From Guillardia theta CCMP2712 (taxonomy: Eukaryota; Protista; Cryptophyta), in the NCBI RefSeq assembly GCF_000315625.1, contig NW_005434632.1:157901-221900 (forward strand): a stretch of DNA of 64,000 bases, given 5' to 3'. The notes under the pieces are model-generated. The model was not told the origin of the DNA. It did no database searches and saw nothing but the letters and a program-made list of their open reading frames with translations. The position numbers were made by a program, and so were the translations under genes. Each line of letters begins with the position of its first letter. Within the stretch, counting starts at the first letter, position 1. Positions 3,593-51,700 of this stretch are shown here, piece after piece.

Positions 3593-6500
3593 TCACACTT
3601 GAGGTCTCGTCTGAACTACGTAGAACTTTCCGTCCCTGTAACACCCTTCGATGTCCTGCATTGTCCACTCGTGAGTCCTCCATCGTTGTCTCCTCCCCCT
3701 CCACTCTCTCCCCCTTCCTTCCCCACTCCTCCTCCTCCTCCTCCTCCTCCTCCTCACCTGCGGCGTTCCACCCATGGCCTTCTCGACATCGACAGCAACC
3801 TGACAGCATCGATCAGCGATCAGGCATTCCATCCTCTCGTCTTCAACCTTGCAGACTCCTCGCATAATCTTATCTGCGAACCCTCTGTCGGTCGCGAGCT
3901 TCTCGTTGAAGTACATCAACGTCTTCTTGGTGTTCTTGACCATCGGGATACTGTCATACAGCCCTGCTCCTGCAAACCCCTACATGCACGAGTCAGCTCT
4001 GCCCCTCTTACTCTCCGCTCGTCCCTCCCTCCCCCCTTCTCAGTCTCCTCCCCCCTCCCAGCCCCCGACTCCTCCTCCTCTCCTCTCGGCAATGCTCACA
4101 GGAAGGTCCTCTCCGTTGGAGTCCGAACGGAAAATCAAACCTCCGCCGAAGAGCCCGACGCTCTTGCTGGGTAGCGAGTGGACCTGTGAGGTTGTCAAGG
4201 TGATCGGGCGGAGCAGCGGTCAAACTCACAGTCGGATCTCCTGATCCATCCTTCTTCATTGAGAACCCGAGGGCTCTGCCAGGGAAGTTTCCAACCAGAG
4301 TCTCTCCCAGCCCAACGACAATCTGCGTGCGGAAGCAAGAGGGAGAGTTAGGAAGAGACGGAGAAGAGAGAGAGGGAGGAGAACAGAGAGAGAGAGAAAG
4401 AGAGAGAGACAGAGACAGAGACAGAGACAGAGAGACGGAAAGAGCAGAGAGAGGGAGAGAAGGAGAGGGGAGGCAAGGAAGGAGGGAGACAGAAAGAGAG
4501 AGAGGGGGATACAGAGACAGAGACAGTGACAGAGGAGCAAGGCAGGAAGAGGACAACAGGAGCTAGCACAAGTTCAGTCACAGCACCTCAGCATACATCT
4601 CCGTCGAGTCGCCAGTGGCCGGGTTCACCGTGTGGATCACAAACGCGTACTCAGCCTCCACCAGCCTCTGCGGACTAACGTCAGCCATCGTCGAGTCGAC
4701 TATGGCGGATCAGTGGCAGCACCTGGATCAAGACGGCCATCTGGACCTGGTGGACCGGGATGTTGGACTTCTTGCAGCTCCAGTAGGCCCTTTCGTTCCA
4801 TTTGGAAGCCCAGACACCTGCCATGAGGGTCAAGACTTCAAGTGAGGATGGAAGGGGTCGAACCCTTGAGTGCCATGAACGCCTCGTCCCACTCTTTCCC
4901 CTCCAACTCTCCGGACGTGATGATGCCGGACTTCTCCAGGGAAGATTTCAGCTGCGTCACGAGGTCGTTGGGGGCGGAGAGGGAGAGGGTAAGATCCTTG
5001 AGCCTCCGCAGCACCCCGTGCGGATCCTTGGTCTCCTTCAGCTCCTTGTCTATGATGGCGTTGTATGCCTTGGAGATCTCCTTGTTCTCGGGGCAGCTCA
5101 TAACCTTCTCGAACACTCCAAACGGCACAACCGCGCTTCGGGGGGTTTGGATCCAGTCAGGAAGCAGCTTCCGCACCGCGACGATGTTGGTGCTCTTTGC
5201 TCCGAAGGTCTTGGGCGACGCCTTGACGTCTATGGATGCCTCAGGCAAGCAGAAGGAGGTGAACTTGGCTGGAGGAGGCAGCTCGAGCTTAAGGTTCTTG
5301 AGGCCCTCGTTGAGTTGGTTCATGTCGTCTCCGGAAGCAACATCTCCTGTCTCTGTGACAGTGACTCTGTTTCCGCTAATCTGGCAAGATACCGTCTTGC
5401 CCACAAGCTTCCCGAGGTTGTCAAACTCATCAGGGTCGAAGCAAGAGGCGAACAGAACTTTGAGATTCCTAGCCCTCACAGAGATGTGCGCCAACACGTC
5501 AGGAGCATCAGGAGTGATCACACCAACCACTCCAGGAGGAACTTCTTCTTCGCCCGAGAGCGAGTTCGCCAGGAGGACCGTCGGCTTCGAGTAAGTCTCA
5601 CTTTGGACCGACATCAGGTCGTGGACCTCCACAAGCTGACCCACAGCTCCCGGCTTCCCAGTCGAGATCACTTGCCACATGGTTCCACCGCCCAGCTTTC
5701 TAAGCACCTTGTCCAGCTTCCTGAGGAAGGAGGACAAAACAAACGAGCACCCGCCTCCTCTAACAAGTTCTTCAGAGAACAACGTTATGCTCCACTTCTC
5801 AGGGATCTTCTCTGGTGTGACAGCGCACAAACCGTACCCAAGATACTCTGCTCTCTTCTGCATGTTGTTTTGGATGCCGTCAACATAGTCGCCCATGGCC
5901 CTTCTCATTCTCTCAACCACAGCCATGGCCTTGGTGGGCCAGCCTTGCGTCATCCCCTTGTGAACTTCTTCTTCGAGCTGGACCCAGTCCCTCAAGCAAG
6001 CTTTCAGCTCGTTGGCATGCGAGTCTTGGACGTTGGGGTCCAACGTGCCCTTGGCAGGGGAGGATGAGTACACCAAGTTCTCCAGGGCCAACCCGACCCA
6101 CAGGGTGAGAGCACGCGCTCCTGTGTTGAGCTCCACCGAGTCCAGAGAGCCCAACGAGCGTTCAGCCATGAGTCTGAGCTGCGCCTCGAGGCCAAGGTCA
6201 AGGTAGAGGAGATCGCGCAGCTTCATAATATCTCCCTCCTTGGTCATCTTGACACCGATCAACTGCCTGACCTCAGTAATGGAGTCGATAACGGCTGGAG
6301 TGCGGGCCTCGTTAGCTCCTCGCTCCCGCAAGATGCTCTCAAGGAGAACGTTGATGTGGCCTTCCAGAAAGCCACGGCAAACCTCAACGCACTTCTCCAA
6401 GTCAGCCCCAGCGTGAACGTTCTTGAGGATCCTCAAGTAGTTGTTGAAATCATTGATCAGACCGTCCTTCTTGTCACCAAAGAATTGAGGCTCTGTCACG

Positions 6501-8807
6501 ATTGCACGCTCGTATCCTTTCAGCCTCTCGCGGTTCAAGCCATTCTCATGGATTACACGCCAGAACTCTGCCAAATTTCCATTCGAGTGCAAGAATGCAA
6601 GATACGCCTGACAAATAATGATGTCGTCGGGTGTGGAGTTATTGTGCAACTTTTGATGCCATTCTTCAACGAATGTACCCTTGGATTCCGGCAGTCTATG
6701 TCTGTGCATAATGTGCAAAATTTCATCGCGAATGGCTTGACCGTCACCTCCAGACCCACCACGACCAATACAACCAAGCATTAAGCGGAAAATTTCTCTT
6801 TCAATTGGACCTGAGTTTTTCCATCTCCAGGATATCAACTTGTTCAGTTGCTCAGATGCATGCGACAACTCTCTCGGCTTCGTGTTGTAGTTACGTTGCC
6901 ATGAAAGCTGCCTAATCTGCGAGAACCTGAGCCAAATGAAGACGAAATACAAGATGTCACGTCCAGCCTCGCCTGGGGGAGCGCGATCAATCAAAGAACA
7001 AGCCATATGATATCGATGCATCAGGGTGACATGGCCCTGCTTCTCAAAATCAAAGATTTCCCGGGCGACGGTGGCTCCAGTTGGCGGAGAGATCTCAGTT
7101 CCAGACAGAGTGCGTACTAGAGGGGTCTGTATGACTCCAGATTTACTCTTCCCCTTATCCTGAAGCCTGATGCGACCTTCCTCAGTGATCGGCACGCAGA
7201 AATCATGATTGTCTGCCTTGTACCAGGCTCCATTTGAGGTGTCTTTGAGCACAAAAGAGATTGATGGAGGCAACGAACCTCGAAGCTCAAATTTGATACT
7301 TTGCTCTACTGTTCCAACCTCAGTCTTGAACTTAGACTCTACAGCCTTCCCGTGCGCTTCTCCACTCTCCAATGCGGAAATGGTTTCTTGATTGGGCAGC
7401 GTCCACTCTCCAGGTTCTTTCTCAGCAACGCCCCAATGCAAGACAAGTGGGCCAGGCCCCTTGTCTCCCCTTTCTGGAATGACATTGATTTCAACCTTCG
7501 ACTGCTTCACTTTTGCTTTCACGACTCCTTCTTGTCTTCCTTGACTGTTCTGATAGGAGAACGGAATTCGGTAAAGTCTGCCTCCCTCACTCTTGTAGAA
7601 ATCATCGGCTTCTTTAAGATGCGACTCCTCCTGGGCCTTTCGTGCTTCGATGATTTTGACAGCAGACTCAAAGGAAGGTGATCGCTGCAGTCTCATGGAC
7701 TTGCTTTCTTGCTTTCCATCAACCCACGCCTTTTCACGCTGCGCAGCATTCCAGAGCAAATGGGCTAAGTCCTGATTCCACGTGACCGTGCCTGAAGGCT
7801 TGGCTTCTTTGGAGTATTGCGGACTGGCATCAGCTCGCATTTTGTCAACGTCGATAGCTCCAGTGAACGAAGGAGATCGCTGCAGGTGCGGCATCTTCTT
7901 TCCTTCCGTCTTCTTCACCGGGAGGAAAAAGTTTCCGCCTGCACCACCAGGATACCAGTTGTCCCTGTCTGGTTCGAAGAGCACAAACCTGATTCCTATC
8001 AGGGGCTTGGGCTTCAAGTCGTCTGGCACCCAGATTTCCGCTTGCAATTTACCATCAACCATCTTGAGAGGAGTTCTTACTGCACGATCCTTGTAAAGAG
8101 CCGAATGAGCAGGAATAATGGAAGGGCATCCGGCTTTTCCCGGAGTGATCCACTCGTCGTCAGAGTTCACAGCCACTCCCCAATGCAAAGTCAGCGTTTT
8201 GATCTCACTCCCATCCACCGAAAATATCGCTCTTACTCCTCCTTCCTCTCGCCGGCTCTCGGTCTTGAACCAGGCATTGTTCCGCAACTCAAATCGATGC
8301 TCGTGCAGAAGGTCAGCCTTTCCTCCTCGCAGTCTGATCGCTGCACCAAAAGTGCCTTGCTCAGCGAAGCTCTTGAACGAAGACGGGCCATAGCTCTGCC
8401 TTGAACGTGCCCTGTTGATGAACTAGAACAAGATGGATGGTTACATCTTAGCATGAATAGATTCAAAGACAAAGGACCTGAACATGATTGCTGTCTGCTT
8501 CTATGGTGTTGGGAAATAGAATCCCAGCAAAGGCGAATCCAAAGAAGGCTATGCGAGAAACATTAGGATACGTACGCTTGATATCGCCCGAGAATCCAAG
8601 GTACATAGCAGACATAAGGAGACATGCTACAATGAATAGGCCGTTCGCTTTCAGATCCGATTGCTGTACTTCAGATATGATAGCAGGTTGAGTTATTGAA
8701 GCCAGCCGATCAGACTGTATGTAAAGGGCAGCAGACATCGCTGCGAAGGCCAGGAGACTGAGAGTTGCAAGAGCCACGAATGACTTGCATCTCTCGCTTG
8801 CCTTCAT
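3593..8807 (-). CDS. GWD: Alpha-glucan, water dikinase (GWD/R1 family), multi-exon
   Basis: Two CBM45-like LHWGV repeats; WLRFSQIRQLSWQRNYNTKPRE, GQAIRDEILHIM, EEWHQKLHNNSTPDD; phosphohistidine motif TPDAPDVLAHISVRARN; C-terminal PPDK-type exons VWASKWNERAY, IVVGLGETLVGNFPGRAL, IFRSDSNGEDL, GFAGAGLYDS, DIEGCYRDGKFYVVQTRPQV*. Exon 1 (8807-8478) splices via GT..AG intron 8477-8423 in frame into ORF 4838..8287. Confidence 0.93.
4330..4560. repeat. (AGAGAC)n/(GA)n purine-rich microsatellite inside a GWD intron
   Basis: Direct tandem agagac units at ~4400-4436. Confidence 0.85.
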
Positions 8808-25623: not shown

Positions 25624-28514
25624 TTATTGCGCGCGAGCTGATGCAATCAAACGTGCTATTCTCTTCGCTTGTTCGGAGATCTCCTTGAGAGGCAGGAGAG
25701 CCTGTTGCAATGTTACCAACCAACAACTTAATAAGAGCTCTTACCCGCCCATGCTCAAACCCGATCTTGTGTAGTGTTTGCTGTTGTCGAGCTCCGTGTG
25801 GATCGATCTGTTCAATCCCAGCATGAGCAACCATACCCCCTCCCCCCCTTGCACAGCAACCCACCAACCCCTCCGCCTTCCCCAAACAACGTTACGCACC
25901 AGCAGCCAATCCCCCAGGTTATCTTGAAACCCAGTGGAGAAGACAATGACCTGCGGCATGACAGCAGCAGTTCAGAGCGCGCGAGGTACCGACGACATCC
26001 TCAACATCACTCACGTCACAAGGAACAAGCTCAGTCTCACTAGACTCGCACGCTCGCGTCGATACCAGCACGTGCCTTCCCCTGGCCTGCATGAGCGGCC
26101 CATGAACCCTCAGCGCTCCTTTCTTGATGCTGTCCACGAGCCCTCCTCCCTGCCTCCCTGCCCACTTGTCGATGATGGGTACCCGCCGAGCACCGAAGGG
26201 CCTCCACTTGCGGGCGCCAACGGGAAAGAAAGGGGTCCACCATGCTCGCCCGAAGTTGACGACGATGAACAAGTCGACAACAGCGTCTGCCAGAGCAGGA
26301 GGAAGGTGCTGTAAACAGAGCCGAGACACCCATTCCACTGCCAGAGGGCCCCACTCCCTCCTCACGATAGGAGGAACGCTTCTAACGCTCAGTGAGACCG
26401 ACCTGGCACGTGGCAGGAGCGACATGGCGATGTCTGCTGCGCTGTTACCCATCCCGACGATGAGCACGTGCTTCCCTGCCAAGCTCTGCATGCTCTTGAC
26501 CGAGCTTGAGTGGTGCACCTCCCCCTCGAAGCCGGCGACAAGCTCCTTCGTGTTCGGCGGGAAGCAAGGGACAGCGTGTAGCCCTGATGCGATAATGAGA
26601 TGCTCTGCAATGAAAACTTTCCTCTCAGATCGCGGCTCCTGCGCCTGCTCAGGCTCGTTCTGTCCACCCTTGGCCTGTCCCGTCCCTCCTTCGGAAAGGA
26701 CTTCTACCTCCACCAGCCACCTGCAGCTCTGCGGAACCCTCCTGGCAGAGACAACTCTTGTCCTTAACGAAATATTGAGAGAGAAGCGAGCGGAGTAGCA
26801 GTGAAGGTAGTGGATGAAGTCCCTGCAGCAGACCATCACCAGTAGCCACCACAAGCACGGATGATGAAAGACAGCAAAAGTACACATCATAACGCAACAC
26901 AGCTGATTTGCTTGCTCGTTGACTAGCACCTCCCACTCACCTTGCGCTGAGGTCGCGGGGGAGCAGATTAGAAATATTGTAGTGAGGGAGCTGACAGTGT
27001 TGCCGACGGGATGTGATGTTCAGCTCGTCGTATTGAGAGTTCCAGTGACCTTCGATCTTGTCTTTCTGTTCGAAGATGAGGATGTCTTCCACGCCCCTCT
27101 TGACAAGACATGCAGCTGCTGCAAGGCATGTCACTTGCCGCTCTATCAACCCAACAAGGTACCTGCTAGGCCACTCGCTCCTGCTCCGACTATAATGCAC
27201 CCGACATGAACCGTCCTTGACGCGTCACCGCTATGATCGGCTGCGCATGCGCCTCCTGATAGCGAAGGGCGGAGCTTGTTGAGGTACAGACTGTGATCGT
27301 GCCTGGGGATTTCAAACCCCATCGCCTTTGCTGCGTGTAGCACCACCGGCAACTTGCTCAGATCCACTTCCCCCACCTCATGCTCGTCCCATCCCATGTT
27401 GGCATGTACCATGGCTGCGGCATGGCACGCGTACACCTCGTGCTCAGGAAGCAGAATAGAGAAGGAGCGCTTCGAGCATCTGATAACTTGTGTCATGACT
27501 TGACAACGACAACCAGTGCACGCCACCTCTCAGGTTGCATCCTCAACAGACCTCCGTCGATCACGGTGACATCCTTTCTCTCTCTGATGTATCTACCCAA
27601 CAAGGTTAGATCATCCCGCTTTACCGTCTCTCTCCGAGCAACAACAACCATGGCAGCCCTACCTGGAGTTCATTGCTGATTCCACAGACAGCACGTTTCC
27701 TGTCAAGGGGCAAGGGACTGAAAAGACGACGGCAATGCCGTCTCTTGGAATATGCTCACGAACGCCGAGGTCGTACTTGCCCACAACCCAGACACGACAG
27801 AAGACGCCGTCTTGCAGTGATCTTGCGTATCTGATTGAGCCTGCTCTCTGGATTAGAACAGACAGACATCCATGCTACAACTTTGACTTGCCTGTTGATC
27901 TTGACGCCTCCTGGCGAAGGGCTTCAAACCTTGCGGTAGATGAAGTGTAGCAAGTGACATCGAATCCTGTTTGAGAACAAGTCATCAAACTGACAGCTAG
28001 CAGGGTTTCCTCCTCACCCTGTTTTACAAGCGATAGCGCGACTGCCCTTCCTACCTTTGACGTTGGGCCAGTCAAAAACACCTCCCGTCTCATCTGTCAT
28101 GACTTTAGGTACCACAGCAGCAAACATCAGCTTCTTGCTTCATCACCTCGCACGATTGTTCAGACTGCCTGAAGAGCTCGATAACGTTCTCGACGACAAC
28201 GGCAGCTGTCAAGGTGTTTCCATGGACTACCTGATTGAGAGCCTGTCAGATGACTGAGGTAGTTCTTTCCTCTTCGATCTTTTCTCACCTTTGTTGTCTT
28301 TGGATTCACTTCTCGAACGAGCTAATAAAATCTTATCAGTTTGACCGTTGTCACCGACTGAAAGACCTCTTCTCCTGACTTGTTGACGAACTCGGCTTTG
28401 TTGAGAGCTCCTAGACCCAACACCTGAAAAGAAAGCAAAAACATCAAATTCTGGTAGACAAGGAGGAGAGCATGGGGGCAGGGAGAAAGGGAGGAAGGGA
28501 GGAAGGGAGGATAG

Positions 28515-28545
<31 letters not shown>

Positions 28546-31500
28546 AGAGGGATGTCAGGCGGTGTGACAAGGGAGGCATGCAGGCAGACCTTGTATCCAA
28601 GTCTGTCTGCCTCACGGAGGATCTCGCAGATGTTGTCATGAGCTCGACGAGGAAAGGAAATGAACTGCCAGCCAAACAGTCTGCAGTCTCCCGTCAGCTC
28701 TTGGCCCTTGCGGTCAACCCGCTGCCTCTAACAAGTCCAGAAAGCCAACGGACCTGCTGAGCCACACTGAGTTGCGGCAGCCAGAGAAGGAGAAATCGTC
28801 CATGTAGAGGTAGGGGAGGCAGACGCGAGGACTGAGGAGCATCCATATGATGGAGTAGACGAACAGCTGGAGGGCCTGTGAGTTGAGGGAGGAATGCAAA
28901 GGAGGGGAATACCAAGGGAGAAGTCAGCATCATCCACGTCTTCTCTTCCCATCTTCTTGCTTGCTGCTCTGAACTCTTGTTCCACAACTGTTACCAACTT
29001 CAGGACGAGATGATTCCAGCAAGAATATGTGATTCTTACAGCAAATGCCGATGACAGGGTCGTTGGATGCGCAAGAAAGACGACGTCACCTGTTTCGAAC
29101 TAACACGAACATGTCACGGCACAAGGCAATGGAATGATACAAATGGATGTTGCAATGATTCGATCAGATCAGCTTCATTGATAATCATCCTCCTCATCTT
29201 AACGCGCATCAGAGGCAATCGCGGGTAAAAGTCTATCAACACTCCTTCCTCGCTCCATCTCCGACAGCAAACTTCATGCACAAGCAAAGATGAACCGATT
29301 TCAGAGTCACAAGTGCATATGGGCGACAACAAAGTCGGCAAGGCACCTGAGATCGCTCCGCTGGCAGGCACCAACCAGCCTTGTACAAGAGCTTGCGGAG
29401 GAAGGAAGGACAAGCCGAGTCTCTGCCACAAGTTGTGAGATGTAGAGCTCGATGGTTGAAGCTCCATCACAGTGAAGATGAAGACTTGTCCCGTGACAGG
29501 AGAAGCCGAACAATCTCCTTCTCGTCCTTCCCTTTCTTGTTCACTTGCATGCTCTCATATGCAGACACCACCTGCGAGGGTGAAAGATGTGAAAGGGGCC
29601 ACACAAGACAACATCTCCATCAATACAACAAGAAACAAGCATGAGCAGACATGAAGATGAATCACAGATGGGGAAGAGGCAGGAGGATATGCCCATGGCC
29701 AGATATACAAATTTGTCTCGGAGCGGGAAGTGAGCAGCTAAAACGGGAGAGGCAAAGGAATCGAAGAAGGCAGGAAATGAGGTAGAGGAGGAGGAGGAGG
29801 AGGAGGAGGAGGAGGAGGAGGGGGAGGAGGAGGATGCCAGATCAGAGAGGGTATGATGGGCAAACGGTAAAGCGAAGAGAGAGAAGGCAAGAGGACAGAG
29901 AGGAAGGCAAGGGAGAGAGGGAAGCTCGGCGGAAGAGGGGTATCAACAGAGATCTTACCAGTGCCGACGAGAGGGCAAGAGCGCAGAAGAGATTGAAGGT
30001 CGACAGTGAGGAGAAGAAGGAAGCAAACAGAGCTGATAGAGAGATCTTGAAGCAGGATGTGACGACATAAGAATGTTGAAACATGATACATACCATGGAA
30101 CCCAAGGCAAAGACAGCAAAGATGATGCTGTCATTGATCGGGACTGACATGCAGTTGCTCGAGAACTCCCGCATAGAGTCGAACATGCCGAGCTTGCTTT
30201 CACAGTCATCTTCATTCTTCCACTTTGGCGCAAACTTGTCATCATGAGTTTGACCATAGATGACAGCCTTGAAGGTCTCAACGAAGAGTGTTGCCGTTGA
30301 CTTCTTGGTGACCTGAAATAAGTTTCATCACTATCACTCGCATTGTCTCCATCATCGTCACCATCTCTAATCTCACAACAACCGGCACATCGGCGCCGTC
30401 AACACAAATCATCTTGGTGACTATTTCATTTTGCTTTGTCATCAGTATCTCTAGAGTCACCATCTCCACAGACTTCCAACATGATCATCATTGTTTCACA
30501 TGAACCATACATTAAAGATCTGAACATGTCTCTTATCAACACTCAAGGGTGATTTACCTGGCACGCAAGAGCATGGACAAACCAGACAGCTGCGATGAAA
30601 ACAGCAAATGACAACAGCTCCTTGTCCTTCGAGATCATGTCTAGCACAATCTTGCAATGGGTTGCAGTATCAAACCCCTTCAACCATCGGTCATGATCAA
30701 GATGCAGGATGGATGTTTGTCATGTCAAACCTGAAGAAGAACTCGCTTCAAGGTGATGAGAGCGTCGACCTGCGACAACTCCCTGTCACTCACTTACATC
30801 AAGAGAATGGATGACAACCAATGAGTCGAGATGCCACTGATCGATCAGCAATGACATGATTCCCAGCCTTTGCAAGGTGTCATTAAACTCATCAGAATCG
30901 AAACTTTTGATCACCTAGGAGAAAATTTCCGGGCAGCATCAAGAGAAACAAGGCAGATCTTCATGCTTATCAGTAAATTTGAGTTCCCTTCCCTCTACCT
31001 CCCATCTCTCTGTCCTCATATCATCTCGTCTCGTCTCGTCTTCTCTCCATCCTCTTCACTGCTCTTCCATCCTCATCGGTTTCCTGTTCGCTCTCTTCTC
31101 CTCCATCTCATTTAAATCCGGCTGTCCTGTAACTTTCTTTCGCTATCACTTACAAACCTCACTTGCTTCATCCTTATCTATGTCAACAGGTTCTTCTTAC
31201 CTTGGCGATATGATAGATACAAGACATCATGATCATGGTCTTGGTAGCATCAGAAACATAACTGCACGTGTATTGGTCAATCACACAGTGATGTTTTCGC
31301 TAGACTCTCTTCTCCTTGTTGATCCCATCCGATTCTATCTCTCGGCCAACTCCCCTCATCTCCTCTCCTCTCCTCTTCTCTTCTGCCCTTCCGTTCCCTG
31401 CCCTGCCCTGTCCTGTCTTGCACTGCCCTGCCCAGCCCAGCCCTGTCCTCTTCTCTCCTGTCCTCTTCTCTCCTGTCCACTTTGCTTTGCTTCGCTTCTC

Positions 31501-32546
31501 CTTCGTTCGCTCTCCCTCTCGCTCTCCCTCTCTTTCCTCCTCCCTCTCCTCCATCCCTCATCTTTCCTCTCTTCTCCTCTCATCACACCTGTAGCACAAC
31601 ATCATCGACAGAACTTCTCGTGCCCAGTAAGCTGAGAGCACTCCAGCAATCACCCAGTAGAACCGCTTCCTGCACATCAACACTAGTTCATGGGAGCAGA
31701 GAGAGAGAGAAGGAGGAAGGTAACAAGAGGAGAAGCAGGAAGGTAACGGGAGGAGGGAAAGATTTCAGGAGAGAGATGGAAGGACAAAGATCAGTGGGAG
31801 TGAGGACAGAAGTGAAATACCGTAGCAGGGCGATGCCATATTTGCGATCGAGACGTTGAAGATAAGGGTTCAGGAGGACGTTGGCATGCTGCATGAAGAT
31901 CCAGACTTCATGTGCGAACAGGATCCAGGTGACTGAGACGTTGATGAGACATCGAGGAGGCACGCATCCATCTCACATGTGTTCTTCTGTCCTGCGCGCG
32001 CTGCTCGGTGTTGACTGTTGTCATGGTTCAACTGCTCTGCGGAGAAAGTCACGGACGAGCTCGAGAGCTCCATAGCTCGCAGCAAACTTACCAAGATGGG
32101 GAAGATCATGCCTGCCATGGTCCACAGAGGCGATGACGGAAGCAAGGTGTTTGAAGTTCTCGTTCAGCGCGTCAACCTTTCCCATGCTCGTCAAGACACG
32201 TGGCGATCGTGACTGAAAGGACCTTGGCCTCCAACGCGTCGATTCTCTGCATTGCCAAACTTTCCTCCACCTGTGAGGCAGGCTGAGTGACCATTCCTTC
32301 GTCATCGGGTACTCCCATCACCTGCACCTCACTTCTTCTCGCGTCCGCTGGCAAGCAGGCGCAGAGGAGCGAGAGAAGCACCTGGAGCATTTGCTGAGAA
32401 GAAGTTTCCGCTTTCCAGAGGATGCCTACCGCGATGAATAGAAGTGCTCCTCGGGACATGCTTTCGCTCCACCGGGACCTGAATGGTATTCGATCATGTA
32501 CCGGAAATACGGCGACAAGATCATTGGTGTTTTCTTGCATTCGCAT
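25624..32546 (-). CDS. CER3/WAX2-like protein (degenerate fatty-acid-hydroxylase-like membrane domain + acyl-reductase/WAX2 domain) fused to a YUCCA-like class B flavin monooxygenase; many short introns; extent upstream of ~29.1 kb less certain
   Basis: CER3-like motifs GDVVFLAHP (~29040-29089), VLGLGALNKAEFVN (~28380-28424), VHGNTLTAAVV (~28190-28226), EVFLTGPTSKVGRAVAL, RVWVVGK, YACHAAAMVHANMGWDEHEVGEVD..VLHAAKAMGF. The same exon continues to IIVGAGASGLA. FMO motifs: HWNSQYDELNI, IIASG, FEGEVHHSS, VLIVGMGNSAADIA, VIVFSTGF, LHKIGF; stop at 25624-25626. Upstream exons WHLDSLVVIH (30798-30836) and VWFVHALACQ (~30558-30590) resemble the CER3 N-domain. Confidence 0.85.
29785..29833. repeat. (GAG)n trinucleotide microsatellite (intronic)
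   Basis: Tandem gag units. Confidence 0.9.
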
Positions 32547-34110: not shown

Positions 34111-34433
34111 GAGACCGCTTGCTCGCTCACCATGTTGGAAAAGCCTCTACAATTGTGCTTCACTATCGTCTTGCTGTTCACCATGATGAGTAAGTTCGAC
34201 TAAAAATACTGGCTCCTAAAGGGGAAGCTAGAAATCAGACACACTTCACTCCGAGTGATCTGACGCCTGATAAGGCAATTCCACACGCCGCCGTACAACA
34301 TAGAATAAAAACAAGCCAGGCCTTTCCTCCCTGAAAAACCGTGCCTCTCTCATGAATGTCTTCTACCTTCTCTACGCTACTGTCTTCAACACCATCACCG
34401 TCTCTCATTGCCATAACGCTCATATAAAACCAT

Positions 34434-35193
34434 CTTTATTGACATCAAACAAAATCATCCTCGGCATACACATCAGCAGGTCTCGGGGCAGGCAGGGGAG
34501 AAGTGCCACGGGTGATATCTCCGGCCTCTTGTACTCCCGGCGTGCCTTCCTTGATCCTCTCCCTCCGGCTCTCCTACATGCCAAAGAGGCGCCTGTAGAA
34601 GGTCTTCTTGCTCGCAAGGGATACCTCGAAGGGGGTCGCGATGGGCTTCTCGGCGAGGTCGAGGCGGTGGTGAGCAGCCGTGGCGAGGACCTCGTGGAAG
34701 GCCTCCGTCTTCGCCACCTCCACGTACCTCCGCGCATGCACAGGGGCGTGCGCCCTAGGCTGCATCTCGGCCAGCGCCGGATGCGGGGCGGCCAAGTGGA
34801 GGGACGGAGCGTGGACGACGGAGTCGAGGGCGATGAGACGGGCCTGGGCGGGGACCTGGTGCGGCATCACGGCGCCAGTAGCAGGATGAGGCATCTGCGA
34901 CATAAGCACGTCGTGCTTGGCTTGGGCGATGGCGAAAACGGGGTTGGTCGACATTGGCGATGTTGGGGTTGTGGAAGGTGTGGGTAGGAAGCGATACAAG
35001 AGGTCACAAGGAGGCTGGCTGGGAAGCACTGAGAGCAGCGAGAGGTCGGCTGAGAGCTGAGGGGGGAGAGGGCGTGGAAGTAATGGAGGTGGGAAGGGAG
35101 AGGAGGGAGGTTATATAGGGGCGGGAGGGGAGGAGCAAGGAGGGGGGAGGGGTAGGAGAAGAGGGTATATTTAGAGACAGAAGTGTCAGCAAG
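34434..35193 (-). repeat. ~760-bp near-identical inverted duplication of 38086..38845 (promoter + gene + 3' UTR)
   Basis: Reverse complement matches from cttgctgacactt to gatgtcaataaag with only a few substitutions. Confidence 0.9.
34574..34954 (-). CDS. Small His/Pro/Ala-rich orphan protein (126 aa), copy 1
   Basis: MSTNPVFAIAQAKHDVL...ASKKTFYRRLFGM*; TATA-like tatataa upstream (35111-35117); AATAAA downstream; two paralogues in the window. Confidence 0.8.
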   Translation of the reverse strand: MSTNPVFAIAQAKHDVLMSQMPHPATGAVMPHQVPAQARLIALDSVVHAPSLHLAAPHPALAEMQPRAHAPVHARRYVEVAKTEAFHEVLATAAHHRLDLAEKPIATPFEVSLASKKTFYRRLFGM

Positions 35194-38168: not shown

Positions 38169-38324
38169 CCTCCCTCCTCTCCCTTCCCACCTCCATTACT
38201 TCCACGCCCTCTCACCCCTCAGCTCTCAGCCGACCTCTCGCTGCTCTCAGTGCTTCCCAGCCAGCCTCCCTGTGACCTCCTGTATCGCTTCCTACCCACA
38301 CCTTCCACAACCCCAACATCGCCA

Positions 38325-38705
38325 ATGTCGACCAACCCCGTTTTCGCCATCGCCCAAGCCAAGCACGACGTGCTCATGTCGCAGATGCCTCATCCTGCTA
38401 CTGGCGCCGTGATGCCGCACCAGGTCCCCGCCCAGGCCCGTCTCATCGCCCTCGACTCCGTCGTCCACGCTCCGTCCCTCCACTTGGCCGCCCCGCATCC
38501 GGCGCTGGCCGAGATGCAGCCTAGGGCGCACGCCCCGGTGCATGCGCGGAGGTACGTGGAGGTGGCGAAGACGGAGGCCTTCCACGAGGTCCTCGCCACG
38601 GCTGCTCACCACCGCCTCGACCTCGCCGAGAAGCCCATCGCGACCCCCTTCGAGGTATCCCTTGCGAGCAAGAAGACCTTCTACAGGCACCTCTTTGGCA
38701 TGTAG
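38325..38705 (+). CDS. Small His/Pro/Ala-rich orphan protein (126 aa), copy 2
   Basis: Identical to copy 1 except R->H near the C-terminus (FYRHLFGM*); AATAAA at 38839-38844. Confidence 0.8.
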   Translation: MSTNPVFAIAQAKHDVLMSQMPHPATGAVMPHQVPAQARLIALDSVVHAPSLHLAAPHPALAEMQPRAHAPVHARRYVEVAKTEAFHEVLATAAHHRLDLAEKPIATPFEVSLASKKTFYRHLFGM

Positions 38706-39379
38706 GAGAGCCGGAGGGAGAGGATCAAGGAAGGCACGCCGGGAGTACAAGAGGCCGGAGATATCACCCGTGGCACTCCTCCCTTGCCTGCCCCGAGACC
38801 TGCTGATGTGTATGCCGAGGATGATTTTGTTTGATGTCAATAAAGCATGTTTGTATTGATTTTCGGATCGCTTTGGCTAGGGGGTTGCAAGTAGTGCTTT
38901 GACCACTGATTACAATGGCCATGCGATGCACTTCTTGTTGCCCACCCACAGTTGATGTTTTCAAATGCAACTCTTGCATTTGTAATGGGATGCGAGCAAG
39001 TTTTTATGTGTTCTTATTTACTGATCGTGTGATTGTTGTGTCTGTTTTTGTTTTGAAGATGTCTTGAACAATTCAATGCATCCTACCAAAGTGGTGAATT
39101 TGCACACGGGTCTCTACTTGTTTGACTTGAATCGTTAGCTTCCAAACATCGCATGTTAGTGCCCTTATTTCAAAATGATGATTGGTCATCTTCTCAGCAC
39201 GCTCATTTGAACCTAGCTCCTCGATCCACCCAAGTACCCGTCAACCCCCCCCCCCTTTCTAAAAAACAAACCATGAAACTCGTACTTAGTTCCCTCCTGC
39301 TTACAATCACGTTCTCTCTATCTCTGCAGCCGTGCACAACTCTTCATAGATCAACAAGTTTATTCCTTCCATGACTTCT

Positions 39380-45764: not shown

Positions 45765-48700
45765 TTGGTCATGGTTGCAAGCAGGAATCGGGGACAGAGC
45801 CTCCGTAGCATCAAGAAGACCGTGAGGGGCACGTGGTATGAGGGTGTGTGGGCCGTCTGGATCTTTTTTGTCTGCGCGTTCATCGCCTTCAACGATGTCG
45901 TCTCGTTCTGGCCCACCCAACGGAACTGGAGCTCCAACGGGATGGAGACCTTGTTGGACATATCATGCATCCTGTTCGCCTTGGAAAGTCTGCTTCACAT
46001 GTTGCTGTTCGGGTTGTTCAAGAGGAAGAAAGGAGTGTCTGCAAACAGCAAGGAAGACCCCAAACCTGAAGATGGCAATCATAGTGCGGTGGAGGAAGGA
46101 GAGCCAGAGGTGCAGGAGGAGGTGGATCCAAGGACTCTGTTGAGCAACGAGGAGCTGCAGGGTATCAAAGACATGTTTCGATTGTTTGACACTGACAACA
46201 ATGACACCATGGATGAGTTCGAGCTGCGAGTTGCAATGAGAGGCCTGGGATATGGAACAAGCAGCGAACAGGCCCACAGGCTGTTCATGGCGCTCGACAA
46301 GGACCACTCAGGCTGCATCGAGTCTAGTGAGTTCGAGAAAATGATTGCAGAGAGGATGCTGGAAGAGCAAAATGACGATGGCTACTTCGACTTGCACTGG
46401 AACAAGATTTACTTCTTGATCACTCTCGTTGGAATCATCCTCCTGCCATTGCGCAGTATGAACGTCTTCAGAGCAGTTGGATGGGGCAAAGTTGTGGAGC
46501 TGACAAGATTCATCAGATTAATCCGATGGGTTCAGGTCATCCCAGGGACATGCGATGTGATCATTTGCATCCCCAACTCCCTCAAAGCGCTCTTCAACCT
46601 CTTCAACTTGTGGTTCTTCTTCATGATCATCGCTGCCATCCTTGGGACATCCCTGTTCGGTGACGGGCAACTCCATGGCAGGTGCGTCGTCACTCAGACG
46701 AACAAGTTTGCCATGAGGTGGAACGCCTCGATTTGGAACAAAGCCAGCACAGTTGGAGAGCTGCAGTCTCCTGAGCGACACTGCGGCTCCAATCTAGACT
46801 GTGGAGATGGATTTGAATGCTCCTGTCTACCCCCCCGGAACAACTTGAACGACAGGAGCTTCCTCCAGGGAAGGCCTGGTTGCGAGAGGATAGAGCGTGG
46901 CCTGTATGGACAGACTAATCAGGGCACTCCGACTGACATGTACTATGGCTTCTTAGGATACAGCAACTTTGCGCAGGCACTGTTTACAAATTTGATCGTG
47001 TCAACACTGAGCCAGTGGACTTACATCATGGATGGGATTTTGGAAGCGTACGGGAGTGGTTGGTGTGTCTACTTCATGGTCATTGTTATCGTGATTCGTT
47101 TCTGGCTGCTCAATCTGTCCACTGCTATCGTCACAACGGTCTACTACAAGGTCCGAGACAGGAGGAGGCAGATCGTCTGGGACGATGCCATGGCCAAGGC
47201 TGAGAGCGCTCTTCTGTCCCAGCTACAGATGGAGGACGAGCATCAGCTTGACAAGGAGATCTCTGTTAGAGAGAGGGCAAAGCATTTGATCTTAGGCAGT
47301 CTGGGGGCTCTGGACGAACTTTCTCCTCGCGAGCTCGGGCAGAGGATCAAACAGGCGTTCGTCGCGTTTGACTCGGATGGCTCAGGATCGATCACTGCTG
47401 ACGAATTATCCAGCGCCCTTCTGAAGCTAGGACTGGAACTGTCGGAGCTTGAAGTTCAGGAAATCACAATGCAAGCCGATACAGACGGAGACGGCATCAT
47501 CCGGTACGACGAGTTCGAAGACATGGTGAAGATGATGTTGTCCAAGACGAGGGTTGAGGCGCTACATGATGAAGATATCATTCCGATCGAGGAGGAGAAG
47601 GTCAAGTTTCTGTGGATCTTCAGCATCAATCCGATCTACAGCAAGCGCAACACGAAGCCCCTTTCTAAGACGTCTCTCTTCTTTGCCAAGTTGATGTCTG
47701 CCCCGCACGTGGTGGACGAGTGTGGTGAGCGAGTGCCGGGCGACGTCATCGTGGAGGCCAGGAAGCGCAACATCGACATAAGGTGGGGGCCAGGGCCCAT
47801 GGAGTGGAGCCTGGTGGCGCGAACGGGGGGAGCAAGTATCGGACTCAAGTCGAGAAAGCATGATGAAGGGGGCGATGACCCTTCTCGGAATCTGTCGAGG
47901 CATCGGGTGAAGGAAATGTTTCCTTCTTCCGCGGTGATCCCTGGAGGAGAGGGAGTGTCGGAGGACGAGAGCAGGGACGACATCCGGCAGATGATCAAGC
48001 AGTTTGACATCCAGGGCAAGAATGACTCGGAGCGGAATCAGGTTGTTTCGCCTAATGCACTGCCTTACTCAGACATCGTCATCTTCATATGCATTGTGAC
48101 CAATACTCTGATCATGACGATGAGTCACTACGACGGAGTTGTCAACATGAATTGCAACAATCCTTCTTACTGCCCCGACAATGTTGAGATTATGTCTCCT
48201 CCTTGGTTCTTTGCTCTCAACGTCATTCAGATCACATTCAATATTGTGTTCACCATCGAAGCCGTGTCAAAGATGCTAGCTCTGGGCAGTTTCTATCGTT
48301 ACATCGTCAGGCCAATCAATCAGTTCGACTTCCTTCTTGTAGTCATCGCAGACTTTCTGATGTTCCTGAGCGTCTTCGGCATTGACTTTCCAAACATTTC
48401 TTTCTTTCGAGCTCTTCGATTGCTACGAGCTTTCCGTATGGTCGTCACTTTCCATCGGCTCCGCCTCTTGTTCAACAGAGCTTCAAGTGCCTTTCAGGGC
48501 ACCCTCCACGTCTCTTTCGTAATGATCCTGTTCCTCTTCATTCTCTGCTTGTTCGGTATGCAGATCTTCATGTGCCCAGTGAAGGAGGACTGCGGAGAAG
48601 ACGACTGCCCCTACTATAAGAATTCATGCCTCGACCACTACAACTGCCCGTTCTACCTCACCTGCTCCTTTGGCCGGAGGTACAATTTCAACACCTTCTG

Positions 48701-51700
48701 GAACGGCATCATTGTACTGTTCTCAGTTACAACAGGGGAGGACTGGAGCGATACGATGCTGGCAGGGATGCGAAGCCTCACCACGGGGTTTATGAAAGAG
48801 TACCTTTCCATAATGTACTTCATCATTTCCTACATCATCCTCAATCTCCTTATCTCCAACTACTACATCTCCGTCATACTCGACAGCTTCAACACTCCTG
48901 AGGAGGACAAGGTATCGTTGCAAGCCCTGAGCTTCCGCAAGATCAACGTGCAAGCGCTGAAAGACAAGTACTTCAAGAAGGCTGGAAACTTTGCAAACCG
49001 GGAGCTGGAGCATGACGACCATGACGTAGAAGTCAAAAACAGCAACAGCAGAGACATTCTTGAGCTGATCACCAGAGATAAAGAAGACCAAAACGTCGAG
49101 CAAGTCAGCGACGTGACAATCTTTGGCATCTTTGCTCCTGCAACCCCCAACGAAGAGAACCCTGATGCGCCGAAGAACGTGAGAGGGCTGGTTAGGGACT
49201 TCCTGAACAATCTCTGGTTCCAGCGTCTCATCCTTGCTGCCATCATGGTCTCCTGCGTTGTCCTTACTCTCGACTCCCCCGTCCCCGAGTACTCCCTCAT
49301 CAACAGCACCGCCTCCAAACGGCTCAGCCTAGGAGCCTTCGTCGTATTCCTCATAGAGATGGTTCTCAAGATGCTCGACCATGGGATATACTGGGAGCAC
49401 CCCGAGGCATACTTCCGTACCAGCTGGAACATCCTTGACTTCATCGTCGTCGTGGCTTCAGTCCTTGACCTGGCTGGCTTGTCTGGTCTCACCGCCCTCC
49501 GCGTCATCCGCGTTCTCCGACCTCTTCGCCTCCTCAACCGTGTCAAGCATCTCCAGTTCTTGATGAGCGTTCTCTACAAGTCACTGCAGGACTTCGGGAG
49601 CATCATGATCGTCTTCGCCTTTCTCTGCATCGTCTCTGCCATCTTCATGCAGACCATGTTCGCGGGCGAGACTTACATGTGCAGCGACAACGACAACGGC
49701 CATCGTGTGAACTTCCTCTCTGTCAATTGCAACCCCAACACATCTGCAGGCTGTGACGAGGTGACCAAACATCTCACATCTCCAGCGATCATCAAGAGAA
49801 TGGATTGTGCTGGAACATTCCTGGCGGGCAGGCGAGGCGACCTCTACTTCGGCTTCAAAGGTGACAACACAGAGTTTCTCATGCCCAGGGCATGGCACCT
49901 TGGCCACCACAACTATGACGACTTCTTTTCTACTATCCACACTATCTTTCAGATTTGGACCCTCGATCACTGGCCAGAGATCGCATTCCAGTCTATTGAT
50001 GCCAAGGGCATTGGGTATCAGCCTGTCTATAATTATCAGCCGGGCTTCTTTGTCTTTTTTTGGATCTTCATCATCATCTCTCGATTCTTCATCACTCCTC
50101 TGATCATTGGAGTACTTCTTGACAACATAGGGCAAGTTGGCGGAACCTCTATCTTCACAACCTTGCAGAAGAACTGGAGGCGCTTTGAGGTCAAGCTCTC
50201 AAATCTCAAACCGTTCGTGATGGTTACTCTTCCCAAGAATCCTTTGCAGCGTCGGATTTGGCTGTTTGTTGAGCGGCCAGCTTTCCAGCATTTCTTCATG
50301 ATCATCATCATCTTGAACACATTACTCATGGCTTCCGACAGCTACAACCCAAACAGCTCGTGGTCAGACTTTGCATACGCCATGAACATAGTGTTCATCT
50401 TCTTGTATGTGATTGAGATGGGATTGAAGCTCTTTGCTCAGCGAATTCATTTCTTCTCAAGCTCCTGGAACAACTTTGACCTTCTGGTGACATCAGTGAG
50501 TCTTATCGAGATCTTCTTGACTTTGAATGGTGGAAGCCGCTCGTCCATGCAGTCTCTTCGCGTTGTTCGTCTCTTCAGAATCTTCAGAACGTTTCGTATC
50601 GTCAGACGACTCCCTTCCTTGCACATTATGCTGCTGTCCTTGACAAGCTCTGCCGCCCCTGTCGCAGCCACTTTCTCCCTCCTAGTCATCTTCGCCTTCA
50701 TCTTTGCGGTCATCGGCTCGCAATTCTTTGCTGGGCTCAAGTTCGGGCACGGGATGACGACATACTCCAACCTCAACGACGTCGCTCATGCAATGCTGCT
50801 GCTGTTTGAGGTCTCCACAGGTCAGAGGCTGGAAACTGCGATCTGGGATGCCTCCATCGAGGCCCCGCAGTGCACTCAGTGCACGGCATGCTACTATTCC
50901 ACCGTCAAGAAAGCCTTCGTCGACTTCTCTGACTGTGGGAACAGGGGCGGGGCGATCATCTTCTTCGACCTGTACTACCTGGGAGTGTGCTTCCTGATGC
51001 AGCTCTTCGTCTCTGTGATCCTCGACTGCTACCTGGCGTTCGTGGCAGAGCTTGAGTTCGTACTCAACGATAACCACCTCGAGAACTTCCAGGACAAGTG
51101 GAAGGAGATTGATCCTGCCGGGACGGGGAAGGCAAGCGTGTGGAAGTTGCGACAGCTCCTGGAGCGCCTGCACATCGAGGGAAACCCAATGGGATCGTGC
51201 GGGCTGGTCGACGAGGTGAAGCATCGAGCGATCAGGCTGGAGATTCTTGAAGGATGCGACGATCACGTCATGATCTTCGACCGGGTCGCTCGCGTGCTCG
51301 CGCTGGACGTGGCTGGCTCAAGGGCTCTTCCCTACGAAGAGATGCTCAGCTACCAGAGCTCCCGTGCCTTCTTCGCGCAAGCAGCTATGTTGAGCCATGT
51401 GGCCCAGAGCTTCTGCAGGAGGAAACTGAATCGAGATGTCACGATGAACAGGATCTCGAAGGAGCTATTGACGGATGAAGAAGGGTTACAAGGCATGGAG
51501 GATATTTCAAAGTGGGTCTACAAGTGGGAAGAAAGGAAGACGAGCTCTGTACCATCTCCAAACGTCCTGCTCTTCAGGGAAACTCAGCACGACGATCGCA
51601 GCTCTGTGCTGGTGTGCTGCTCTCTTCCATGATCACATGAGACTGACACTTGTCTCAGCTTGACTGTGACCGAAAGATCATCATCAAGATCATTCCTACA

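What the first reader, a model, noticed from the sequence alone, without database searches (positions are those of the whole stretch)
25624..29100. CER3/WAX2 acyl-reductase module fused in frame to a YUCCA-like flavin monooxygenase: candidate new lipid/aldehyde-processing enzyme
Seen: the exon ~27481-27163 encodes, with no stop or intron, the WAX2 C-terminus (YACHAAAMVHANMGWDEHEVGEVD...AAKAMGF), a ~35-aa linker and the FAD-binding GAGASG of a class B FMO. A 44-nt GT-AG intron (27119-27162) then leads into a complete FMO with FxGxxxHS, GMGNSA and STGF motifs. Established: in the plant CER1/CER3 alkane system the WAX2-side domain is the proposed acyl-CoA-to-aldehyde reductase (related to cyanobacterial acyl-ACP reductase) and these proteins end at WAX2_C. 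YUCCA-family FMOs perform oxidative decarboxylation, and related class B enzymes perform Baeyer-Villiger chemistry on carbonyls. Inference: one polypeptide may reduce acyl-CoA to an aldehyde and channel it to the flavin-peroxide site, giving for example C(n-1) formate esters/alcohols or acids. That would be a flavin-based alternative to di-iron aldehyde decarbonylation. I know of no described CER3-FMO fusion but cannot run a search.
Basis: partly seen in the sequence, partly recalled or inferred. Interest (0 to 1): 0.9.

Follow-up and report, generated by a model that had tools for sequence, protein, structure and literature searches.

The report
Three-part algal fatty-aldehyde enzyme fusion
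Cryptophytes, diatoms, golden algae and dinoflagellates share a gene (split in two in brown algae), not found described in the papers searched, that joins a fat-reducing enzyme to a flavin oxygenase and a new kind of membrane domain; it is a testable candidate for the still-missing way brown algae make their main hydrocarbon.

Summary
The fusion is real and larger than reported. The gene (Guillardia theta GUITHDRAFT_163647) runs 32459-25624 on the minus strand; my model has 33 exons and 1224 aa. Spliced contigs from three studies read through the WAX2-FMO junction and skip the 44-nt intron; one spans all three modules. It is not CER3. In place of the hydroxylase there is a conserved helical domain with five invariant His and no Pfam, PDB or Atlas match. 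Then comes an AAR-fold reductase (Cys745 conserved), then a class B flavoprotein. The same order occurs in cryptophytes, diatoms, chrysophytes and dinoflagellates. In brown algae and Chrysoparadoxa the N-domain is a separate head-to-head gene. The public gene model already has the fusion, but I found no paper on it. Best reading (0.45, inferred): acyl-CoA is reduced to aldehyde, deformylated by Baeyer-Villiger oxidation, and finished by the N-domain. It is a candidate (about 0.2) for the unidentified FAP-independent C21:6 pathway of Ectocarpus, whose genome carries the gene pair. The scan did not report this family on other DNA.

The parts
32092..32459 (-). Exons 1-4: ATG at 32459, hydrophobic signal-peptide-like stretch (aa 4-22) and a coiled-coil-like segment (aa ~35-65)
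   Evidence: Follows public model P0092; hydropathy; similar N-termini in homologues. Outside the stretch laid with reads, so not RNA-checked here.
30262..31932 (-). His-rich helical N-domain (aa ~96-280): invariant H102, E103, H110, D123, E150, H176, D186, D203, D226, H230, D236, H258; no known family or fold
   Evidence: tblastn; alignments; no Pfam/NCBIfam hit; AlphaFold of homologue P0085, pLDDT 89; no fold match; splice joints from 30961 downstream in RNA contigs
29347..30261 (-). Linker with two hydrophobic helices and the 'IVRLLLxRD' segment (CxxCxLL in many homologues)
   Evidence: RNA joints 30045|30094, 29569|29957, 29422|29471; model; homologue sequences
29159..29271 (-). Alternative terminal exon seen in one run (X2); it would give a 435-aa N-domain-only protein (stop at 29238-29236)
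   Evidence: X2 contig 6, depth 43; translation. One run only.
27304..29099 (-). AAR-like / WAX2 reductase module (aa ~425-785): GALNKAE, HGNTLTAA, NAD(P)-binding FLTGPTSKVG (28078), Cys745 in YACHAAA (27427)
   Evidence: Pfam; fold of homologue P0085 matches AAR 6jzq, Z 30.6; conservation; spliced contigs
27163..27479 (-). Junction exon: end of reductase + ~35-aa linker + FAD-binding GAGASG
27119..27162 (-). 44-nt GT-AG intron
   Evidence: skipped in X1, X2 and X4 contigs; ends GTACCT...TTGCAG
25624..27205 (-). Class B flavoprotein monooxygenase module (aa 819-1224): GAGASG, ASGLH, FEGEVHHSSSV, GMGNSA, R1039, PIIDK, STGF; stop 25626-25624
   Evidence: PF00743 49.6 bits vs cut-off 22; PDB sequence and fold hits; RNA joints

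Best explanation
One membrane-anchored, NAD(P)H-dependent enzyme that shortens an acyl chain by one carbon. Shown: one spliced ORF joining three conserved modules. Step 1 (inferred, strong): the AAR-like module takes an acyl group from acyl-CoA onto Cys745 and reduces it to the aldehyde, as AAR and the CER3 C-domain do. Step 2 (inferred, moderate): the fused class B flavoprotein attacks that aldehyde with its C4a-peroxyflavin (Baeyer-Villiger), giving a C(n-1) formate ester. Step 3 (inferred, weak): the His/Glu/Asp-rich N-domain, fused or encoded head-to-head, finishes the product in the membrane by hydrolysis to the C(n-1) alcohol or elimination to a 1-alkene. With 22:5n-3-CoA, elimination would give exactly 1,6,9,12,15,18-heneicosahexaene, the brown-algal hydrocarbon whose enzyme is unknown.
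For: One spliced contig spans all three modules, and its exon positions match my model base for base. Reductase and FMO occur together wherever the sequence is long enough: named homologues and 8 metagenome loci showing N, AAR, FMO in order. The N-domain is the separable part, which points to direct reductase-to-FMO coupling. AAR fold Z 30.6. ACH is kept in all 18 sequences aligned, and both Rossmann motifs and the NADPH-side Arg are conserved. AAR-family reductases hand their aldehyde to a partner (ADO, CER1, PigE transaminase; PMC8341465; PMC13326499). YUCCA10 and fungal FMOs deformylate aldehydes through formate esters (PMC12930011). The nearest bacterial FMO hits look YUCCA-like and JGI labels a homologue indole-3-pyruvate monooxygenase. 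The Ectocarpus siliculosus reference assembly GCA_000310025.1 carries the gene pair.
Against: No activity data. The FMO signature lacks its terminal F/Y/W and diatom members keep only the His. The linker varies 65-314 aa. The N-domain, not the FMO, is the most conserved module (44-62% vs 25-38% identity), which fits a central catalytic role for it. Diatoms carry the gene but are reported to make the Delta3 isomer from DHA (PMC4483651), which elimination would not give. The same reductase fold also serves amide release (TAD, Z 27.9).
Confidence: 0.45

Rival explanations
1. The N-domain is the aldehyde-cleaving metal centre, a non-homologous replacement for the CER1 di-iron hydroxylase or ADO. 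The flavoprotein only feeds it electrons from NADPH. The product is a C(n-1) hydrocarbon without a new double bond: Delta3-C21:6 from DHA-CoA in diatoms, Delta1-C21:6 from the 2-enoyl-CoA elongation intermediate in brown algae.
For: The N-domain sits where the hydroxylase sits in CER1/3, has five invariant His plus acidic residues and is the best-conserved module. FMO-fold relatives include plain reductases (YpdA, FNR). This reading accounts for both isomers (PMC13521276; PMC4483651).
Against: No structural likeness to ferritin-like, heme-oxygenase-like or FAH proteins. One relative (L007) keeps reductase+FMO without the N-domain, and Tribonema has the N-domain gene with no reductase-FMO gene within 10 kb.
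Confidence: 0.2
2. Nitrogen or sulfur chemistry: the AAR-like module makes an aldehyde (then aminated elsewhere) or releases an amide like a TAD, and the FMO N- or S-oxygenates the product, giving an oxime, nitrile or hydroxylamine lipid.
For: Fold hits to TAD 9e4s (Z 27.9), DiatB (Z 29.9) and the LbmA oxidase didomain; NCBIfam hit to PigE; an FMO motif reduced to one His resembles N-hydroxylases (PMC7570161).
Against: No transaminase or carrier-protein domain in or beside the gene in the loci examined. The module is closer in sequence to CER1/3 (32-35% identity) than to the TAD chain (13% in the structural alignment of homologue P0085).
Confidence: 0.15
3. Catabolic direction: the FMO (with the N-domain) first cleaves a lipid or head group to an aldehyde, and the AAR-like module oxidises it to acyl-CoA, so a toxic aldehyde is salvaged.
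For: Thioester/aldehyde interconversion through a Cys is reversible in principle (own knowledge); the domain set is equally consistent with it.
Against: The characterised AAR-family members cited here (AAR, CER3, CER1/3, PigE) all work reductively.
Confidence: 0.12
4. Artefact: two adjacent genes merged by a gene caller, or a chance read-through.
For: Raw reads of run X17 were too sparse to test the junction (11 reads laid); contigs alone cannot show transcript ends.
Against: The junction lies inside one exon; three independent spliced contigs cross it; uninterrupted ORFs on short contigs of other species encode the whole fusion (L006, L008-L010).
Confidence: 0.02

Closest known systems
Plant CER3/CER1 and algal bifunctional CER1/3 (PMC13326499)
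   Same: WAX2/AAR-like reductase module with catalytic Cys (AtCER3 C587 motif ACHAGG vs ACHAAA) and NAD(P)H motif; hydrophobic N-terminal partner domain in the same position
   Different: The N-domain is not a fatty-acid hydroxylase and has no His boxes; an FMO follows the WAX2 end; the reductase forms a separate group in the tree; G. theta has a separate CER1/3-type module on C130
Cyanobacterial acyl-ACP reductase (AAR, 6jzq) with ADO
   Same: Same fold (Z 30.6, 315 residues aligned); proposed one-carbon deformylation
   Different: 21% identity, far below the TIGR04058 cut-off; membrane-anchored; partner is a fused flavoprotein, not soluble di-iron ADO
PigE (prodigiosin; PMC8341465)
   Same: AAR-like thioester reductase fused to the enzyme that consumes its aldehyde
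   Different: Partner is a PLP transaminase; bacterial; no third domain
YUCCA / bacterial YUC-like class B FMOs, DiatB (8z12), SMFMO (4a9w)
   Same: Two Rossmann motifs, class B fold (Z 29.9 and 27.9); YUCCA10 deformylates aldehydes by Baeyer-Villiger chemistry (PMC12930011)
   Different: 20-28% identity; signature FxGxxxHxxxY/F not complete; fused to a reductase
Terminal amidation domain (TAD, 9e4s; 10.1101/2024.10.28.620694)
   Same: AAR-like fold with invariant Cys (Z 27.9)
   Different: TADs end bacterial NRPS modules and none was found in eukaryotes; 13% identity

Membership tests
CER1/CER3/CER1-3 | [quoted passage not shown] | tested here: not met
   No Pfam hit; profile vs CER FAH alignment probability 0.1%; no FAH fold match; no His box in the domain
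CER1/CER3/CER1-3 | WAX2 (PF12076) reductase module with catalytic Cys and NAD(P)H-binding motif | tested here: met
   Cys745 and FLTGPTSKVG
CER1/CER3/CER1-3 | Protein ends at WAX2_C | tested here: not met
   About 440 aa follow in frame
CER1/CER3/CER1-3 | Reductase groups inside the CER1/3-CER3 clade | tested here: not met
   CER sequences plus the G. theta C130 copy form a 100/100 group that excludes all 23 fusion-family rows (unrooted, plant CER1 rows dropped by my cutting rule)
CER1/CER3/CER1-3 | Acyl-CoA to aldehyde or hydrocarbon activity | not testable with these tools
   needs enzyme assay
Acyl-ACP reductase (TIGR04058) | AAR two-domain fold | tested here: met
   Z 30.6 to 6jzq for the model of homologue P0085; Foldseek E 2.4e-14 to 6jzy
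Acyl-ACP reductase (TIGR04058) | Score above equivalog cut-off | tested here: not met
   36.4 bits vs 449.7 for P0085; no hit for the public G. theta model
Class B flavoprotein monooxygenase | Two Rossmann motifs GxGxxG and GxGxxA/G; PF00743 over cut-off; class B fold | tested here: met
FMO subclass / YUCCA | Signature FxGxxxHxxxF/Y (PMC7570161) | tested here: not met
   FEGEVHHSSSV in G. theta; last position variable, FxG lost in diatoms
FMO subclass / YUCCA | Placement in the YUCCA clade | tested here: inconclusive
   No YUCCA sequence was available from the tools; the FMO tree with three outside rows is unresolved at its base
Type I BVMO | Signature FxGxxxHxxxW | tested here: not met
Terminal amidation domain | Located at the end of an NRPS/PKS module with a carrier protein | tested here: not met
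   No such domain in the gene or its neighbours
Terminal amidation domain | NAD selectivity (Asp2102 equivalent) and Thr-Thr-Gly motif | not tested
   residue-level structural alignment not returned

The most novel reading that the evidence does not exclude
This family is a separate, so far unrecognised route to fatty-acid-derived hydrocarbons, using flavin-peroxide deformylation and/or a metal-binding membrane domain of a new fold. Its split head-to-head form is the unidentified FAP-independent enzyme that makes Delta1-heneicosahexaene in brown algae.
Probability: 0.22. Interest if true: 0.92.

Novelty: new variant of a known kind. Interest (0 to 1): 0.76.

Why it matters
A 2026 study (PMC13521276) showed that the main hydrocarbon of Ectocarpus and Saccharina is made without FAP by an unknown enzyme, and reported no CER1/3 homologue in those genomes. 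Ectocarpus does carry this divergent WAX2/AAR-like reductase fused to an FMO, head-to-head with the N-domain gene, so one CRISPR knockout tests the link. Independently of that, the family adds a new partner (a flavin oxygenase) to the AAR/CER3 reductases and a strongly conserved domain with no known fold, spread over major marine and freshwater primary producers. A flavin-based one-carbon shortening that needs no ferredoxin or cytochrome b5 would interest alkene and alcohol biocatalysis.

Tried and rejected
(1) Two genes or a mis-joined model: rejected. (3) Known fold for the N-domain: Foldseek none at E<=0.001, VIA best Z 7.6 to a designed bundle, Atlas best TM 0.50-0.53 to Alpha-E domains, feature searches blank. 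This is not proof of a new fold; AlphaFold DB was not available. (4) Prokaryotic or viral N-domain: viral scan blank; the single GTDB hit is a diatom-like fragment at a MAG contig end, read as contamination. These are pattern-seeded scans. (5) Raw reads X17: 11 reads, uninformative for the junction. (6) FMO tree: base unresolved. (7) Papers: no mention of the fusion in a CER3 review, two FMO/YUCCA surveys or the CER1/3 paper; DiatB paper not found; Chaudhary 2021 not read. (8) The 5' side of the C130 copy reads N, so its hydroxylase domain could not be checked. (9) Betaine-lipid (DGTA/DGCC) synthesis was considered from the taxon spread and dropped, as I could see no fit to reductase chemistry.
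Full report
Observation. The window comes from an 87.1-Mb, 669-contig genome. The locus encodes public protein P0092, GUITHDRAFT_163647 of Guillardia theta CCMP2712. Exon 27479-27163 carries the end of Pfam CER1-like_C (E 3e-7), YACHAAA, a short linker and GAGASG in one frame. Intron 27119-27162 is GT-AG and 44 nt. Contigs from three runs of three studies skip it and read through the exon without a break. The runs are only guessed to be RNA, but they lack the introns, so they derive from mRNA. Raw reads of a fourth run were too few to help.

Gene structure. From the RNA joints I built a 33-exon, 1224-aa model from 32459 to 25624 with one terminal stop. One 3156-nt contig (X4) runs from the N-terminal domain through the reductase into the FMO, and its exon positions agree with the model at the checkpoints tested. 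The public 1181-aa model already contains the fusion but mis-splices several exons. Exons 1-7 lie outside the stretch laid with reads; they rest on the public model and on homology. My joined model was used only inside local scripts, and the joined search and fold steps were left out.

Three modules. (a) After a signal-like stretch and a coiled-coil-like segment comes a domain of about 185 aa. It has 51 columns at least 90% conserved over 25 sequences, including five invariant His and seven acidic residues. It has no Pfam or NCBIfam hit and no similarity to the CER1/3 hydroxylase (probability 0.1%). AlphaFold models the homologous domain of P0085 confidently as an all-helical bundle (pLDDT 89), with no convincing match in PDB or the ESM Atlas. 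Moderate hydrophobicity suggests it is membrane-embedded. It is single-copy in this genome. (b) The reductase module has the fold of cyanobacterial acyl-ACP reductase (Z 30.6) and of the terminal amidation domain (Z 27.9) in the P0085 model. The ACH motif with Cys745 and the TGxTSKVG loop are conserved. They correspond to the CER3 residues shown to be needed for activity (PMC13326499). (c) The FMO module is class B by Pfam and fold. It keeps both Rossmann motifs and the NADPH-side Arg, but its signature ends in V and is reduced to the His in diatoms.

Distribution. The junction exon alone retrieves long proteins with WAX2 followed by FMO. Named carriers of the family are Baffinella, Mallomonas, Skeletonema, Symbiodinium, Cladocopium, Ectocarpus, Nemacystus and Chrysoparadoxa; some of these models are partial. 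Uninterrupted ORFs on 3.6-3.9 kb contigs encode all three modules. Of 20 metagenome loci found with the N-domain, 8 show N, reductase, FMO in that order on one strand, 3 more show N then reductase before the contig ends, and the rest end too soon. In Ectocarpus sp. 6, E. siliculosus, Pylaiella and Chrysoparadoxa the N-domain is a separate gene head-to-head with the reductase gene (the Pylaiella locus ends before the FMO part), and Nemacystus has consecutive gene numbers. Tribonema has the N-domain gene without the partner nearby; one relative (L007) has reductase-FMO without the N-domain. So reductase+FMO is the fixed unit and the N-domain is a coupled but separable third part. One G. theta run shows an alternative exon at 29271 that would give a 435-aa N-domain-only protein ending close to where the brown-algal gene ends; this is one run only. 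No named green-algal, red-algal or haptophyte hit appeared, but the searches were capped and do not show absence. In the reductase tree the fusion-family rows are set apart from CER1/3, CER3 and stand-alone relatives (96/90), and a second G. theta module on C130 sits with algal CER1/3.

Mechanism. Shown: architecture, splicing, conserved catalytic motifs, folds. Inferred: all chemistry. AAR-family reductases make an aldehyde and pass it to a partner: ADO, the CER1 domain, or the transaminase of PigE (PMC8341465). Here the constant partner is a flavoprotein whose relatives can deformylate aldehydes through a formate ester (YUCCA10 and fungal FMOs; PMC12930011). I therefore favour acyl-CoA to aldehyde to C(n-1) formate, finished by the N-domain (0.45). 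The main rival makes the N-domain the metal-dependent aldehyde cleaver and the flavoprotein its electron source (0.2). N/S-oxygenation (0.15) and the catabolic direction (0.12) remain open.

Link to an open question. Brown algae make Delta1,6,9,12,15,18-heneicosahexaene without FAP and without detectable DHA; the enzyme is unknown and the authors found no CER1/3 homologue (PMC13521276). The E. siliculosus reference assembly (from my own knowledge, strain Ec32, now species 7) holds this gene pair, with a truncated public model of the reductase-FMO gene. Either leading mechanism could give the Delta1 isomer: formate elimination from 22:5n-3, or deformylation of the 2-enoyl intermediate. Against a simple story, diatoms carry the gene yet are reported to make the Delta3 isomer (PMC4483651), and G. 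theta has a CER1/3-type module besides. I put the link at about 0.2.

Novelty and verdict. The two C-terminal modules are of known kinds, and databases already hold fused models under the names 'flavin-containing monooxygenase' or 'CER3'. I found no paper describing the architecture, the N-domain or the split pair; subscription journals are mostly not covered. It fails the CER1/CER3 membership tests while probably working like CER3 in its first step. Verdict: a real, conserved enzyme architecture that I could not find described, a new variant of the AAR-plus-partner theme with one unclassified domain; interest 0.76.

Noticed in passing
window 29159-29271 (-): Alternative acceptor at 29271 in run X2; that contig is about 3.5 times deeper than the reductase-FMO contig of the same run, hinting at a separately ending N-domain-only transcript.
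   Followed up: partly
G000:C130:136259-137771 (L015 5259-6771, +): Second WAX2 module, 52-82% identical in pieces to an algal CER1/3 and grouping with them; its 5' side reads N.
   Followed up: partly
L005, L016, L018, L004: Head-to-head pair of N-domain gene and reductase-FMO gene in brown algae and Chrysoparadoxa; the E. siliculosus public model (CBN76497.1) misses most of the reductase.
   Followed up: yes
L017 7072-12758: In Tribonema minus the N-domain gene is head-to-head with an NmrA/epimerase-type SDR instead.
   Followed up: partly
L007 188-3581: A relative grouping with the cryptophyte sequences keeps signal, coiled coil, reductase and FMO but shows no N-domain.
   Followed up: partly
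P0217, P0157, P0168: The Cladocopium model carries two N-domain copies in tandem, and related proteins look circularly permuted, as expected from tandem repeats of the domain.
   Followed up: no
L014 111-560: A diatom-like fragment of the N-domain gene sits at the end of a Verrucomicrobiales MAG contig, probably a chimeric assembly.
   Followed up: partly
P0023, P0024, P0039, P0028, P0034: Stand-alone WAX2/AAR-like proteins with neither hydroxylase nor FMO; P0023, P0024 and P0039 branch between the fusions and CER1/3.
   Followed up: partly
window 4838-8287 (-): 1149-aa ORF that looks like an alpha-glucan water dikinase (recognised from memory, not searched).
   Followed up: no
window 45765-51632 (+): 1955-aa uninterrupted ORF resembling a four-domain voltage-gated cation channel with EF-hands (from memory).
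   Followed up: no
window 53523-63978 (-): Very long ORFs rich in fibronectin-III-like repeats (738, 505 and 2070 aa).
   Followed up: no
window 34352-35029 and 38250-38840: Near-identical ORFs at both places, suggesting a local duplication beside an assembly gap.
   Followed up: no
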